DNA of 63,188 nt, counting the filler, from Sluysia triapertura (lineage: Eukaryota): assembly GCA_046118255.1 (NCBI GenBank). It is 5 parts of 5 records of this genome, joined end to end, with 100 filler letters (N's around TTAATTAATTAA, not from the genome) between each part and the next. Parts side by side here need not be neighbours in the genome. Positions count along the whole stretch, not along the records: positions 25,354 to 40,966 come from JBJNIA010223574.1; 4 more parts are not named here. One strand, written 5' to 3'. Numbering within the stretch: position 1 is the stretch's first letter; every line of letters begins with the position of its first letter. Shown one piece after another: positions 37,068 to 40,505 of the stretch. A program made the translations under genes and the position numbers. A model generated the notes under the pieces. The model saw only the letters and a program-made list of their open reading frames with translations, was not told where the DNA came from and made no database searches.

Positions 37068-38582
37068 GAGGCTCTAGATGTTTTCACCTTCATCACTCTG
37101 ATTTCTTTTTCTACTTTTTTATTTCAATTATTAATGTATCAAATTCATTTTTAATATTATTAACCATGATTTTAATTCTTGAATATTTTAAAGGTTCCAA
37201 ATATTTTACAAGGTTACTAGAAGGTCTCAACTGATCCCAAGTGTTAGTGTTTTTCTTAAACTTAAATCTATTCACTGCAAATTATCTGAGAAGTCAGTTC
37301 GCCTAATATATACGTTTTACACCACTATTGGAGATGTACTATTAGGTTTTCTTAATTCTATTAAACTTAACTAACTTTTCACTTAGGATATTACTTTGTG
37401 TTACAACCATTTACGAGGTGTTGTTTAAATAAAGCTTTATATTTTACAAATTACGCAACCCGTATTAAGGTGTTGCTTTTCTCAAAATAATAGTATATTA
37501 CGCAACCCATATTAAGGTGTTGCTTTAGAAAATGAATTTTAAATTAATTACTTGAAATAAAATCACTCGGACTACGTAAGATATATTACAATTACTTAAA
37601 CTACTTAAGAGGTCTAACTTACAATAAAAAGTAAAACAATACAAATGGTTAATTAAAATAATAGTGATTTTATAACCTACTCAACCTCGTGAACGTTGAG
37701 TTGATTTTTCGCAACCCGTGTAAGGTGTTGTATAAAAATGAAAATAGTTTAAGTATGATATAAAGTGAAGTGATAAAACTTAAAGTAAATCAATTACTTG
37801 AGTGCATGGAATGATTAAAATAGAATAGCTGAAACTTGGCTACGGAAACTTGTGACTTTATCTTGAAAGATTTTGCAAAAAATTCTTGTGTCTACTTTCT
37901 AAATCGCTATTATATTTATATGAAAATTACTTTTAAGATGGTTTCTGTTAAAATAATTTATTTATTATTTTTCTTTGTTCTAATTACTAAAATAATTTCT
38001 AAAAATAGATTTTTAAAATAAAATTACCTTGTTTATGTTAAAATAAATTTAAAACAAATAAATTTTATAATAAACAAATAAATAATAAACAAAATAAATT
38101 TTATTTCTTGGTTTCCTATTTTTTTCGTTATTATTTTAATCAATTATAATTTTTTATAATTTTATAATTGTTTAAAATTAAATTCTTTATAATTCTTTAT
38201 AATCTTATAATTTCCTGTTTTTTTTAAATTTTTGTTTTTGATTTTATTTATAATATGTGATAATAAATTTTAAAACACATTAAAACACGAATACAGTTAT
38301 AAATTACACTTTTTACATACTTTACACAAGATTCAGAAGTTCAAGGGTATCTTCATACCTCAAGACATCTTTCTAAACCTTACTGAAGTCTTCATAAGGA
38401 TCTCAATACCTTACAAAGGTCTTTAGCACTTTATAATGTACCAAAGAGGCTCTAGATACTTTCATCTTCACCACTCTGATTCTTCTTCTACTATTTTATA
38501 TTAATTACTACTATATTAAACTTGTCTTTAATATTAGCAACTATTAATTTATTTCTCTGATCTTTTAAAAATTCCGAAATTT
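37068..38582 (-). mobile_element. LTR-like unit containing hairpin cluster A; flanked by two diverged copies of a PPT/LTR-start junction (37068-37205 and 38446-38582)
   Basis: Direct repeat GAGGCTCTAGAT..TTTCA.CTTCA.CACTCTGATT. On the minus strand a purine-rich tract abuts TG (38464, 37086), and a TATAAATA box lies near 37915. Confidence 0.5.
37403..37731 (-). other. Cluster A of bulged hairpins (GCAAC-A-CC-loop-GG-GUUGC)
   Basis: Copies at 37403-37424, 37455-37476, 37502-37523 and 37711-37731. Confidence 0.8.
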
Positions 38583-38714
38583 TTAAAATGTAATTTTTTA
38601 CATTATAAAGGGAAATGTTTATTGAGTACAATTATTTATTAAAATTAACCCTTCTAAGTAAAGTTTAATAAAATAATTTTAAAGCCTATTATTATAATTT
38701 TAAATCCTATTATT

Positions 38715-39040
38715 CAGGATCCATTATTAATAGCGATGAATAAAAGACCTATAATAATCTTGAAGTTTTGGGATATGAACACCATACCGTTAATCATTCA
38801 GTTAACTTTCTGGAACCAGTTACATGTGTTCACACTCAAAACATAGAATCTTATTGGGCTAAAAATAAAAGAAGATGTAAAAAATGATGGGCATCAAAAA
38901 GATATTTTTACAGATTATTTAAATTTATGTGGAGAAGAGATAATGTCAGGGTAGAGAGTTTTGAAAAAAATTCAGAATTAATAAGAGATTTTTATCAATA
39001 AAAATGGTTTATTTTTTGAAATTATTTTTGTTGGGGCAGA
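38715..39040 (+). mobile_element. Merlin (IS1016/ISXO2-like) DDE transposase 3' remnant
   Basis: [51 protein letters not shown] followed by FMWR. Matches the Merlin H.TVNH...HTQ.IE..W signature. Confidence 0.9.
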
Positions 39041-39370
39041 ATTTTTACAAAATATTATTTCCTAAATGCTTATCGGGATCTCAGAGATTCTCAAAGGTCT
39101 TAGATGATCTCAAGGTTTATAAGTTCACGTATGTTTTCCAGAATTGATTTCAGTAAACGAAGTCGTAAGTACAAAAGTGTTAAATATAATTGTAAAATGA
39201 ACAGATTCAGTGATCATATTGCCCATCTTCTATGTCTAACAGTATTTCTCCATACCATAATAAATAAAAGGTTATTGCTAATATATAGATTGACCAAAAT
39301 GAAAAATAACAACAATATAAATAAAAATTGTTCCAAAAGATATAAGAATATGCAATATAATCACTTAGAT

Positions 39371-39560
39371 CAGTGGTCTTCACACTTTCTGTGCTGTCAC
39401 CGAGGTTACGAGTCCAAATTTTTTCGCAACCCCTATGGACTAAAATAAATATTGTTAATAAAAAAATTTTTTAACACCAAAAAATTAAAATATATTTAAT
39501 AATAATATATTAGAACATACTCTTGTTGAGATTGTGTTTTGCATCAAGTAGAAATTTTAT
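39371..39560 (-). mobile_element. hAT (Buster/Charlie-like) terminal fragment
   Basis: Terminus CAGTGGTCTTCACACTTT resembles Buster-type TIRs (CAGTGGTxxxCAAACTT). A KTQSQQEY remnant near 39520-39545 is placed like the transposase C-terminus. Confidence 0.5.
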
Positions 39561-40125
39561 TATTTTGTCATCTAATAATATTAATAAAATAAAAGAATGA
39601 TTTAAAAGAATATTTAAAGAATATTTTCTTGTGAATACTTTGCTATAACTTTACTGGTTGATCGAGTCCACCTTTTGAAGAATACTGACTTAGATCAAGG
39701 ATAAGAGAAAAGATAACAAATTATTCATTTACATTATTAAATTCAAAATATAAAACTGTTTTATAAATCTAAGGTTTAAAGTTATTTGACAAAATTGTGT
39801 CATTTGTGAATTATTTTTATAATGCATAAAAATAAAAATTTCCAAGGAAACAGTAATGTCCATAATATATATTGCGAAGATTTTCTTTTAAACTTATAAA
39901 AATGCACACTATAATATTGGAGATGAGTTCACCTAACAGAACTGATCGAAGGCGGTCTATTAGGCCTTTAATATTAATCAAAAGTAACTAAGATTATTCG
40001 TGCTATTTTGGTTTATTTTGCTATTTTGCTATTTCACGTATAATTATAAATTTACAACAGTGACGTAAAGAGCACTATTAATTCCAAAAATTGTTGGAAA
40101 TATTAATAATAATTTATTAGATTTT

Positions 40126-40505
40126 AAGTTAGCCTTTTTAGGGTCTAACTTTAAAAAACAATATTTTAAATTAGCCTTTCCGGTCCAATTATAAAACTTT
40201 TTATATTTTAGAATATTTAGCTAGCCTTATTACGGTCTAGAGAGAATGAATGATATTTTATTTATTTAATAAACAGCTATAAACTTTCGTAAGGTATATT
40301 ATCAAAGAAGTTATTTTACAGATATTAATGATACGAAGAAGAAATTTTTCTACAGGTACAAATATAATAATAATCAAGTTAGCACTTAAATCTATTGATT
40401 TAGTCCAATAAAATTTAGTTAGAAATTAACTTAGCCATTTACGGTCTAAGTGAAAATAAATTAAATATTTTAGTGTATTTTAATTCTCCCGGTTACGGTG
40501 AGAAT
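40126..40505 (-). other. Cluster B of bulged hairpins (e.g. UUAG-A-CC-loop-GG-CUAA)
   Basis: Copies at 40126-40151, 40169-40190, 40221-40240, 40429-40451 and 40483-40505. Confidence 0.8.

What the first reader, a model, noticed from the sequence alone, without database searches (positions are those of the whole stretch)
37403..40505. Two arrays of sequence-variable, structure-conserved bulged hairpins in LTR-like DNA
Seen: nine short hairpins separated by unrelated AT-rich spacers. On the minus strand they fold as stem / bulged A / CC / 5-7 nt loop / GG / stem. Cluster A: GCAAC-A-CC-UUAAUAC-GG-GUUGC (37455), the same with loop UUAAUAU (37502), plus 37711 and an imperfect copy at 37403. Cluster B: AAGUUAG-A-CC-CUAAAAA-GG-CUAACUU (40126), AAUUGG-A-CC-GGAAA-GG-CUAAUU (40169, G-U pair), CUAG-A-CC-GUAAUAA-GG-CUAG (40221), ACUUAG-A-CC-GUAAAU-GG-CUAAGU (40429), AUUCUC-A-CC-GUAACC-GG-GAGAAU (40483). 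At least three different stem sequences keep pairing while the A-CC..GG core is near invariant, which looks like covariation. The G-U pair at 40169 favours the minus strand. Known: a bulged A followed by a 2-bp stem and short loop is the geometry of the MS2 coat-protein operator. Inference: both clusters lie downstream of LTR/promoter-like segments on the minus strand, so they may be multivalent protein-binding RNA signals (e.g. Gag packaging or translational control) shared by different retrotransposon families. I know of no description of such arrays.
Basis: partly seen in the sequence, partly recalled or inferred. Interest (0 to 1): 0.82.

Follow-up and report, generated by a model that had tools for sequence, protein, structure and literature searches.

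The report
Bulged-hairpin arrays in AT-rich repeat DNA

Summary
The hairpins are real. A covariance model separates 8 members (24-37 bits) from background (at most 11.6 bits). The copy at 37403 and a lone hit at 26962 do not score.

Each module is about 30 nt. It has a stem, one unpaired base, invariant CC/GG pairs, a loop that mostly starts N-U-A-A, and a fixed-distance 3' flank (U)AAWWU. All five outer stem pairs show changes on both sides, while the spacers are unalignable.

The two arrays share their spacing (52, 47, 209 versus 43, 52, 208, 54) and lie 2.72 kb apart in direct orientation.

I found no LTR pair and no gag, RT or integrase relic. The only coding relic is an IS1595/Merlin-type DDE transposase fragment, with a repeat (X) present in both orientations. 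The strand is not decided, because fold energies are equal on both. No Rfam family matches, and no other copy could be fetched.

Best reading: repeated sites for a protein that recognises structure in single-stranded nucleic acid. This is a new variant of a known kind, of moderate interest.

The parts
37455..37476 (-). Hairpin A2: GCAAC-A-CC-UUAAUAC-GG-GUUGC
   Evidence: Descriptor hit. MFE fold -8.2 kcal/mol, z -2.5. Model R2 36.7 bits. Its 30-nt module is 97% identical to A3 while the flanks differ (family D16).
37502..37523 (-). Hairpin A3: GCAAC-A-CC-UUAAUAU-GG-GUUGC
   Evidence: -8.9 kcal/mol. R2 36.9 bits.
37712..37730 (-). Hairpin A4: CAAC-A-CC-UUACAC-GG-GUUG. A fifth pair is A.C on the minus strand and G.U on the plus strand.
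   Evidence: Found by model R1, which was not trained on it, at E 0.037. R2 24.3 bits.
37403..37426 (-). A1: degenerate copy with a broken core and a 2-nt bulge or long loop
   Evidence: Fold z-score 0.06. No hit with either covariance model. Sits at the spacing expected for a first module.
40126..40151 (-). Hairpin B1: AAGUUAG-A-CC-CUAAAAA-GG-CUAACUU
   Evidence: -7.9 kcal/mol, z -3.2. R2 37.1 bits.
40169..40190 (-). Hairpin B2: AAUUGG-A-CC-GGAAA-GG-CUAAUU. It has one G.U pair on the minus strand, which is an A.C mismatch on the plus strand.
   Evidence: R1 E 0.045. R2 27.9 bits. In context the helix extends by 6 more pairs with a second 5' bulge.
40221..40240 (-). Hairpin B3: CUAG-A-CC-GUAAUAA-GG-CUAG
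   Evidence: z only -0.95. R2 30.8 bits.
40429..40451 (-). Hairpin B4: ACUUAG-A-CC-GUAAAU-GG-CUAAGU
   Evidence: z -3.4. R1 E 0.0013, untrained. R2 33.7 bits.
40483..40505 (-). Hairpin B5: AUUCUC-A-CC-GUAACC-GG-GAGAAU
   Evidence: z -3.1. R1 E 0.13, untrained. R2 27.3 bits.
37290..37812 (.). Array A unit (approximate limits): modules A1-A3 spaced 52 and 47 nt apart, then a 209-nt gap, then A4
   Evidence: Spacing. Short blocks shared with array B: CGTAAGRTATATTA, AGARAATGAAT, TATTGGAGATG, TCCATG. The limits are not statistically secure.
39897..40545 (.). Array B unit (approximate limits): modules B1-B3 spaced 43 and 52 nt apart, then a 208-nt gap, then B4 and B5 54 nt apart
   Evidence: Local alignment with A has z 5.6 with the hairpins included and z 1.2 with them removed.
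38720..39000 (+). Relic of the C-terminal part of an IS1595/ISXO2-like (Merlin-type) DDE transposase, broken by in-frame stops and a likely frameshift
   Evidence: Translation. Pfam DDE_Tnp_IS1595 E 6.5e-5, 23.4 bits, below the 27-bit cut-off. phmmer finds 1082 relatives at E up to 0.001, the best 64-69% identical.
37033..37214 (+). Repeat X, copy 1, just upstream of array A on the plus strand
   Evidence: 75% identical to copy 2 over 182 bp. Alignment z 25.
38373..38591 (+). Repeat X, copy 2, just upstream of the transposase relic
40847..40966 (-). Repeat X, copy 3, inverted, downstream of array B and cut by the end of the piece
   Evidence: Inverted-repeat pairs I1 and I2. Alignment. z 4.6 against copy 2, above all 300 shuffles.
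37679..37701 (.). Perfect 7-bp hairpin ACTCAAC-N9-GTTGAGT next to A4. It is not of the bulged family.
   Evidence: General hairpin scan. Folded in context.

Best explanation
The eight modules are repeated copies of one cis-acting site that is read as a folded single strand.

Anatomy of a module, written on the minus strand: a 4-7 bp stem of free sequence, one unpaired A, two invariant C-G pairs, a 5-7 nt loop starting N-U-A-A, and a (U)AAWWU flank at a fixed distance.

The modules belong to a non-coding repeat unit of roughly 0.5-0.65 kb. Two diverged copies of that unit sit 2.72 kb apart in the same orientation, inside decayed DNA-transposon debris and not inside LTRs.

The fold, the bulge and the core have been kept while the stem letters and the spacers changed. 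The most likely mechanism is therefore several copies of a protein that recognises structure binding side by side along a transcript of the element, or of a non-coding RNA. This would work like coat-protein operators, the IRE array of the transferrin receptor mRNA, or the Xist A-repeat.

Shown here: the modules exist, are enriched, share one orientation, carry compensatory stem changes, have a fixed flank motif, and the two arrays share their spacing.

Inferred only: that the nucleic acid is single-stranded, that it is RNA rather than DNA, which strand is used, that a protein binds, and what the binding achieves.
For: Enrichment:
- 9 hits against 0.1 expected, all on one strand.
- 9 of 15 core matches on the minus strand have stems, against 0 of 10 on the plus strand.

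Family coherence:
- A model from 4 hairpins finds the other 4.
- There is a clean score gap, 24-37 bits against at most 11.6 bits.
- No independent hit of 20 bits or more appears in 465 kb of unrelated loci.

Structure kept while sequence changed:
- 96% of cells are paired.
- All 5 outer pairs show changes on both sides.
- The covariation score is 0.745 against 0.23 in shuffles, with 0 of 500 shuffles reaching it. It collapses when the 3' partners are slid by 1-3 columns.
- Within array B alone, G-C changes to C-G (B1 versus B4), U-A changes to C-G (B3), and A-U changes to G.U (B2).

Asymmetry:
- The unpaired base is on the same side in 8 of 8 modules, and no unbulged version exists. This argues against a simple symmetric DNA palindrome.

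Sequence constraints beyond the stem:
- The loop starts N-U-A-A in 6 of 8 modules, and the third loop base is A in all 8.
- Three invariant flank columns lie at a fixed distance from GG. Fewer than 1 in 20000 random samples give that many.

Same architecture in both arrays:
- Spacings are 52, 47, 209 against 43, 52, 208, 54, while the spacers do not align (z 1.2).
- A2 and A3 share a 30-nt module at 97% identity with unrelated flanks.
Against: - Only one locus is available. No other copy could be fetched from any collection. The covariation therefore rests on 8 paralogous modules, of which A2 and A3 are near-duplicates and B1-B4 are related.
- The members were picked by a pairing descriptor, so the pair counts are partly circular.
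- There are no transcript data.
- The strand is undecided.
- No Rfam family matches.
- No candidate binding protein is encoded nearby.
- Homology of the two arrays outside the hairpins is not statistically significant.
Confidence: 0.45

Rival explanations
1. The hairpins act in single-stranded or cruciform DNA. They would be recognition or termination signals for a transposition or replication enzyme, as in IS200/IS605 ends, bacterial REP elements or Helitron 3' hairpins. In those systems both ends carry hairpins in the same orientation and an extrahelical base is read.
For: - Both arrays are in direct, not inverted, orientation.
- The bulge is equally a T on the plus strand, and DNA-type folding is as good on either strand.
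- The arrays lie next to copies of repeat X that occur in both orientations, and next to a transposase relic.
- In array B, 4 of 5 hairpins are followed within 12 nt by CTAA on the minus strand. The expectation is about 0.11 per hairpin. This recalls the hairpin-CTRR end of Helitrons.
Against: - No HUH, Rep, helicase or TnpB relic appears in the piece.
- The only transposase relic is a DDE type, which cuts double-stranded DNA.
- The CTAA rule fails for all three array A hairpins.
- Five hairpins per array is not what a terminus needs.
- Other IS1595-type loci carry no such arrays.
Confidence: 0.17
2. The modules are double-stranded DNA sites. They would be imperfect palindromes bound by a dimeric DNA-binding protein, for example subterminal transposase-binding sites of the X-bounded transposon, or enhancer or insulator arrays like baculovirus hr palindromes or the gypsy Su(Hw) array.
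For: - The arrays sit close inside X copies that could be terminal inverted repeats.
- Within an array the arms are similar: GCAAC three times and TTAG-like four times. That fits one protein reading one sequence.
- The fixed-distance flank motif is a sequence feature, not a structural one.
- GGTCT-type words recur both in X and in the right arms of the B hairpins.
Against: - A dimer on duplex DNA does not explain coordinated changes in both arms.
- It does not explain the always-one-sided extra base, the 5-7 nt variable spacing between half-sites, or the unrelated stem of B5.
- The arrays are direct rather than mirror-symmetric about the element.
Confidence: 0.13
3. The modules have no function. 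They would be leftovers of local tandem duplication of a roughly 50-nt unit that happened to contain a small palindrome, with pairing preserved by youth or by palindrome-correcting template switching.
For: - A2 and A3 are near-identical.
- The B units share extra spacer words such as CTAAAAT.
- The locus is a graveyard of decayed repeats.
- Only one locus is known.
Against: - The spacers have diverged beyond alignment while 8 of 9 hairpins are intact, and no intermediate decayed copies exist.
- Template switching would erase the bulge, which is kept in 8 of 8 modules.
- Three unrelated stem types share one core.
- The 208/209-nt gap is kept in both arrays.
Confidence: 0.15
4. One reading: the arrays are Gag or nucleocapsid packaging signals, or translational operators, downstream of LTRs and shared by different LTR retrotransposon families.
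For: - The two arrays are direct repeats, as LTR-borne signals would be.
- The bulged-A geometry is used by coat-protein operators and, from my own knowledge, by the yeast L-A virus packaging signal.
Against: - There is no high-identity long direct repeat pair and no defined LTR ends.
- No gag, RT, protease or integrase relic appears in 15.6 kb.
- The 2.3 kb between the arrays holds a DNA-transposase relic and other repeats instead.
- Two LTRs of one element could not differ this much while the hairpins stay intact.
Confidence: 0.05

Closest known systems
MS2/PP7 coat-protein operator hairpins, and the bulged-A packaging hairpin of yeast L-A virus (from my own knowledge)
   Same: A single unpaired A on the 5' side of the stem, two base pairs below the loop as in MS2. 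The stem sequence is free as long as it pairs. The hairpin is read by a protein as a shape.
   Different: Loops here are 5-7 nt starting N-U-A-A, not 4-nt ANYA. The two upper pairs are fixed as C-G. There is a fixed 3' flank motif and several copies per array. No coat or Gag gene is nearby. The context is AT-rich eukaryote-like DNA, not a phage or virus genome.
Array of five iron-responsive elements in the transferrin receptor 1 mRNA 3' UTR (PMC10351883)
   Same: Several small hairpins with a conserved bulge and loop motif but different stems, spread over a few hundred nucleotides of AU-rich sequence. They are split into two groups by a longer gap and are bound by one protein.
   Different: An IRE has a bulged C five pairs below a CAGUGN loop. 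Neither feature is present here. No mRNA or gene is identified here.
Xist A-repeat, and the coat-protein-binding hairpins of alfalfa mosaic virus 3' UTRs (from my own knowledge)
   Same: Short hairpin cores repeated several times and separated by unrelated U/A-rich spacers, with conserved single-stranded flank words. They serve as multivalent protein platforms.
   Different: Those repeats keep their sequence between copies, whereas here the stems differ. There is no sequence similarity to them, and no transcript is known here.
IS200/IS605 end hairpins, REP/BIME elements and integron attC sites (from my own knowledge)
   Same: Imperfect palindromes whose sequence varies but whose fold and extrahelical base are conserved. 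They are read in single-stranded DNA and have the same orientation at both ends.
   Different: Those are prokaryotic and linked to HUH transposases or integrases. No such gene is present here. attC sites are longer. Arrays of 3-5 modules per end are not a feature of those systems.
Merlin / IS1595 DNA transposons (PMC8101967), as the genomic context
   Same: A DDE_Tnp_IS1595 relic lies between the arrays. Copies of repeat X in inverted orientation could be long terminal inverted repeats, and Merlin TIRs reach 462 bp.
   Different: The paper does not mention hairpins or palindromes in Merlin elements. Five other IS1595-type loci fetched here have none. The arrays are direct rather than inverted. 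TSDs and GG termini could not be checked.

Membership tests
LTR retrotransposon (packaging signal in or downstream of an LTR) | A pair of long, similar direct repeats (LTRs) flanking the element | tested here: not met
   Repeat and self-BLAST searches find no such pair. Arrays A and B do not align once the hairpins are removed (z 1.2).
LTR retrotransposon (packaging signal in or downstream of an LTR) | gag/pol coding relics (RT, protease, integrase, capsid) | tested here: not met
   28 open frame pieces of 45 aa or more across the piece were scanned against Pfam. The only domain found was DDE_Tnp_IS1595. Shorter or heavily decayed relics could be missed.
LTR retrotransposon (packaging signal in or downstream of an LTR) | Primer-binding site and polypurine tract next to the LTRs | not tested
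   No LTR ends could be defined and no tRNA set of the organism is available. No tRNA genes occur in the piece.
MS2-type coat-protein operator | Unpaired purine on the 5' side, two pairs below the loop | tested here: met
   8 of 8 modules on the minus strand.
MS2-type coat-protein operator | Four-nucleotide loop of type ANYA | tested here: not met
   Loops are 5-7 nt: GUAACC, GUAAAU, GUAAUAA, GGAAA, CUAAAAA, UUACAC, UUAAUAU, UUAAUAC.
MS2-type coat-protein operator | Cognate coat protein gene and an RNA phage genome context | tested here: not met
   No long ORFs. The sequence is AT-rich and non-coding, with a eukaryote-type transposase relic.
Any Rfam family | Covariance-model match | tested here: not met
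   Only two sub-threshold hits, and both lie away from the hairpins (mir-2067 at 40581-40648 and Histone3 at 34374-34424). Nothing falls on a hairpin at E up to 1.
Iron-responsive element | Bulged C five pairs below a CAGUGN loop | tested here: not met
   The bulge is A, there are two pairs below the loop, and the loops start N-U-A-A.
IS200/IS605 or REP-type single-strand DNA hairpins | Imperfect palindromes with an extrahelical base, in the same orientation at both ends | tested here: inconclusive
   The same orientation and a one-sided extra base are seen, but the element ends are not defined.
IS200/IS605 or REP-type single-strand DNA hairpins | Linked HUH (Y1) transposase or TnpB gene | tested here: not met
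   No such domain in the piece.
Helitron 3' end | Hairpin followed within about 5-15 nt by CTRR | tested here: inconclusive
   On the minus strand, 4 of 5 array B hairpins meet this and 0 of 3 array A hairpins do.
Helitron 3' end | Rep/helicase gene or relic | tested here: not met
   None found in the piece. Non-autonomous copies would lack it anyway.
Merlin / IS1595 DNA transposon (context of the arrays) | DDE_Tnp_IS1595 transposase domain | tested here: met
   A relic at 38720-39000 has Pfam E 6.5e-5, below the curated cut-off, and 1082 phmmer relatives. It is broken by stops.
Merlin / IS1595 DNA transposon (context of the arrays) | Terminal inverted repeats with GG ends and 8-9 bp target duplications (PMC8101967) | tested here: inconclusive
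   X2 and X3 form an inverted pair (z 4.6), but X3 runs off the piece, so ends and duplications cannot be read.
Merlin / IS1595 DNA transposon (context of the arrays) | Hairpin arrays as a regular part of such elements | tested here: not met
   Six loci around relatives of the transposase (L042-L047, other species, 33-40% GC) have no arrays.

The most novel reading that the evidence does not exclude
A eukaryotic repeat family, or a host non-coding RNA derived from it, carries a so far undescribed shape code. Arrays of about 30-nt modules keep a one-base bulge, two C-G pairs and a UAA-type loop and flank, while the stem letters drift. A dedicated protein would read these modules on single-stranded RNA or DNA, several copies side by side. 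This would be a eukaryotic counterpart of phage operators, attC sites or REP elements.
Probability: 0.15. Interest if true: 0.8.

Novelty: new variant of a known kind. Interest (0 to 1): 0.5.

Why it matters
If the modules are functional, they define a compact motif that can be searched for. It is already captured in a covariance model and can be used to look for a new structure-specific nucleic-acid-binding protein and its mobile element or non-coding RNA in an AT-rich eukaryote. The motif would also be a clear case where the fold, rather than the sequence, is what a repeat family conserves. If genome-wide copies show neutral decay, it is only a local curiosity in transposon debris.

Tried and rejected
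Searches for other copies (all failed):
- DNA pattern scans of viral contigs returned 37 single chance hits and none for repeat X.
- The metagenome scan returned 4 chance hits in GC-rich contigs.
- Scans of prokaryotic genome contigs returned 0 hits and 1 chance hit.
- Three word-index protein searches came back blank. The queries were the transposase piece, an open frame across repeat X, and an open frame across the MITE-like segment.
- An exact look-up of the 114-aa ORF found nothing.

Attempts to identify the organism:
- The best relatives of the transposase relic are only 64-69% identical. They lie in unnamed ENA/JGI/Logan contigs of other species, and one is in Elysia chlorotica.
- The organism remains unknown.

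Test of a link to IS1595-type transposons:
- Six loci around relatives of the relic (L042-L047) were fetched. None carries a bulged-hairpin array.

Ideas rejected:
- A tRNA or small RNA gene cluster: no tRNA genes and no Rfam match.
- A tandem repeat: Tandem Repeats Finder finds nothing over the arrays.
- CRISPR-like arrays: the repeats are not identical and the context looks eukaryotic.
- Hammerhead ribozymes of Penelope-like elements: no Rfam hit.
- Repeat-induced point mutation as the source of the AT richness: dinucleotide ratios do not show it.
- The hit at 26962 as a family member: no covariance-model score.
- A strand call from wobble pairs or fold energy: the evidence is balanced.

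
Full report
**What the piece is.** The usable sequence is 25354-40966 (15.6 kb).
- It has 22-26% G+C and no CpG depletion (observed/expected 0.92).
- It carries long (ATT)n and (AAT)n runs. No ORF exceeds 140 aa, and there are no tRNA genes.
- It reads as non-coding, repeat-rich DNA of an AT-rich eukaryote. I could not identify the organism.
- The run of N at 30144-30327 was left untouched.

**Checking the observation.**
- 1000 dinucleotide-preserving shuffles give 0.10-0.11 hits per strand and never more than 2.
- That test presupposes pairing, so I also counted the bare core ACC-N5-7-GG. It occurs at 15 places on the minus strand, 9 of them with a flanking stem of at least 4 bp. 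It gives 10 matches on the plus strand, none with such a stem.
- No CC..GG hairpin in the piece lacks the bulge or carries it on the other side.
- Each hairpin is its own minimum-free-energy fold. Eight of ten have z-scores between -2.2 and -3.5, while B3 (-0.95) and the lone 26962 hit (-1.07) are weak. The hairpins survive when each whole array is folded.

**Family membership.**
- A covariance model built from four hairpins with 7-nt loops finds the other four, which it had not seen, at E 0.0013-0.13.
- A model built from all eight scores them at 24-37 bits. The next best match anywhere in the piece, on either strand, is 11.6 bits.
- In 465 kb of unrelated loci, the only hits of 16 bits or more are sites fetched with the hairpins' own sequence patterns.
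- The imperfect copy at 37403 (fold z-score 0.06) and the lone descriptor hit at 26962 do not score. I count eight solid members, one decayed copy and one probable chance hit.

**Anatomy.** Written on the minus strand, a module has these parts:
- a U-rich lead;
- a 4-7 bp stem;
- one unpaired A;
- two invariant C-G pairs;
- a loop of 5-7 nt that starts N-U-A-A in 6 of 8 modules, with A at the third loop base in all 8;
- the returning stem;
- a flank (U)AAWWU at a fixed distance from the GG, whatever the stem length. A is at positions 9 and 10 and U at position 13 in 8 of 8 modules.

Three invariant columns among 18 flank columns did not occur in 20000 random samplings of the same strand. The unit is therefore about 30 nt and combines sequence and structure. 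This matches the 30-nt block that A2 and A3 share at 97% identity while their flanks are unrelated (family D16).

**Covariation.**
- On the model-fitted alignment of the eight modules, 96.4% of cells pair.
- All five outer stem pairs show changes on both sides.
- The covariation score is 0.745 against 0.23 in shuffles (0 of 500 reach it). It collapses when the 3' partners are slid by 1-3 columns.

This result is partly circular, because the members were chosen by pairing. A2 and A3 are near-duplicates and B1-B4 are related. The independent content is smaller: three unrelated stem types (GCAAC, UUAG-like, AUUCUC), plus three pair-preserving changes inside array B. Those three are G-C to C-G between B1 and B4, U-A to C-G in B3, and A-U to G.U in B2.

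**Strand.**
- B2 has a G.U pair on the minus strand, which is A.C on the plus strand.
- The fifth pair of A4 is G.U on the plus strand and A.C on the minus strand.
- Summed fold energies are -66.9 kcal/mol for the plus strand and -66.5 for the minus strand.
- On the plus strand the module reads stem-CC-loop-GG-T-stem.

**The two arrays.**
- Start-to-start spacings are 52, 47 and 209 nt in array A (counting the decayed 37403 copy). They are 43, 52, 208 and 54 nt in array B.
- The offset between corresponding modules is 2714-2723 nt.
- A few short blocks sit at matching places: AGARAATGAAT right after the third module, CGTAAGRTATATTA 66-69 nt further on, TCCATG beyond the last module, and TATTGGAGATG before the first.
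- A local alignment of the two units has z 5.6. With the hairpins cut out it drops to z 1.2.

I read the arrays as two old copies of one architecture whose spacers have diverged beyond recognition. This rests mainly on the spacing.

**Genomic context.** I found no support for LTRs or a retrotransposon.
- There is no high-identity long direct repeat pair.
- Pfam scans of 28 open frame pieces found one domain only. It is a broken C-terminal fragment of an IS1595/ISXO2-like DDE transposase on the plus strand at about 38720-39000. It has 1082 relatives in the representative library, the best 64-69% identical. This is the Merlin superfamily of DNA transposons (PMC8101967).
- A repeat I call X occurs three times: at 37033-37214 (+), 38373-38591 (+) and 40847-40966 (-). 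X1 against X2 has z 25, and X2 against inverted X3 has z 4.6.
- The order is X1(+), array A, AT-rich filler, X2(+), transposase relic, a MITE-like segment, array B, X3(-).
- X could be the long terminal inverted repeat of the transposon, with the arrays lying just inside each end. X3 runs off the piece, so neither the ends nor the target duplications can be read. The arrays are direct rather than mirror images.
- Six loci around relatives of the transposase in other species (L042-L047) show no such arrays.

**Search for other copies.** None was found.
- Pattern scans of the viral, metagenome and prokaryotic genome collections gave only chance hits.
- Three word-index protein searches with open frames from the relic, from repeat X and from the MITE-like segment were blank.

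**Interpretation.** The fold, the one-sided extra base, the two C-G pairs and the UAA words are kept, while the stem letters and spacers are free. That is the signature of a site read as a shape on a single strand and used several times per element.
- I rank a multivalent protein-binding platform on a transcript first (0.45 for a functional single-strand site in general, of which RNA is the larger share).
- Single-strand or cruciform DNA signals for a transposition or replication enzyme come second (0.17). The direct orientation favours this, as does the CTAA word 1-12 nt after four of the five array B hairpins. Against it, no matching enzyme gene is present.
- Duplex-DNA palindromic binding sites (0.13) fail to explain the coordinated arm changes and the constant asymmetry.
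- Neutral leftovers of tandem duplication (0.15) fail to explain eight intact hairpins among unalignable spacers and the retained bulge.

**Comparison with known systems.**
- The bulge position matches MS2-type operators, but the loop does not.
- The layout resembles the five-IRE array of the transferrin receptor mRNA (PMC10351883) and the Xist A-repeat, but the motifs differ.
- The logic of variable sequence with conserved fold and an extrahelical base matches attC, REP and IS200/IS605 hairpins. Those are prokaryotic and tied to enzymes absent here.
- No Rfam family matches.

I file this as a new variant of a known kind (arrays of small protein-binding hairpins) and give it moderate interest. 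The motif is well defined and statistically solid. It is known from one locus only, with no transcript, no partner protein and no organism.

**Housekeeping.** No contig looked human. A Pfam hit to Peptidase_M27 (E 0.015) is at chance level in AT-rich sequence, and I did not pursue it.

Noticed in passing
38720-39000 (+): Decayed C-terminal fragment of an IS1595/ISXO2-like (Merlin-type) DDE transposase, with two in-frame stops and a likely frameshift. The best relatives are only 64-69% identical.
   Followed up: yes
37033-37214 (+), 38373-38591 (+), 40847-40966 (-): Repeat X is present three times, once inverted and cut by the end of the piece. It is rich in AAGGTCT-type words and could be the terminal inverted repeat of a DNA transposon.
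   Followed up: partly
39340-39450: A MITE-like, G+C-richer segment (GATCAGTGGTCTTCAC...CGCAACCCCTATGG) contains the same CGCAACCC word as the 5' arm of the array A hairpins on the plus strand, but forms no hairpin. A word-index search with its open frame found nothing.
   Followed up: partly
37679-37701: A perfect 7-bp hairpin (ACTCAAC-N9-GTTGAGT) sits directly next to module A4. It lacks the bulge and CC/GG core, and array B has no counterpart at the matching place.
   Followed up: no
40160-40200 (-): Module B2 can extend by six more pairs (GUUUUA with UAAAAU) with a second unpaired base on the 5' side, giving a 14-bp helix with two bulges in the context fold.
   Followed up: no
37302-37348 and 39930-39965: Before the first module of each array, on the plus strand, lies a longer-range inverted pair (CCTAATA...TATTAGG in A; CCTAAC.AGA...TCT.TTAGG in B). 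Related CCTATTATT words form a 21-bp tandem repeat at 38659-38714, just after X2.
   Followed up: no
40126-40505 (-): Four of the five array B hairpins are followed within 12 nt by CTAA(A)AT on the minus strand. None of the array A hairpins is. The expectation is about 0.11 per hairpin.
   Followed up: partly
25362-25434, 27954-28000, 29530-29597: Long (ATT)n and (AAT)n microsatellites form near-perfect inverted pairs 2.5-4.1 kb apart. They are low-complexity sequence and not a transposon signature in themselves.
   Followed up: no
26577-27140: A G+C-richer stretch is open in several frames on both strands. It has no Pfam domain apart from a chance-level hit to Peptidase_M27 (E 0.015). The lone descriptor hit at 26962 lies here.
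   Followed up: partly
34374-34424 (+) and 40581-40648 (+): Sub-threshold Rfam hits: histone 3' stem-loop (20.8 bits against a 34-bit gathering score, E 0.1) and mir-2067 (23.6 against 70 bits, E 0.72). Both are probably chance.
   Followed up: no
34568-34607 and 36802-36841: A shared G+C-rich word, AAATCCAACGGCTRGC...GGTAAG, lies within weakly similar segments (34100-34763 against 36483-37033). This is another old repeat upstream of X1.
   Followed up: no
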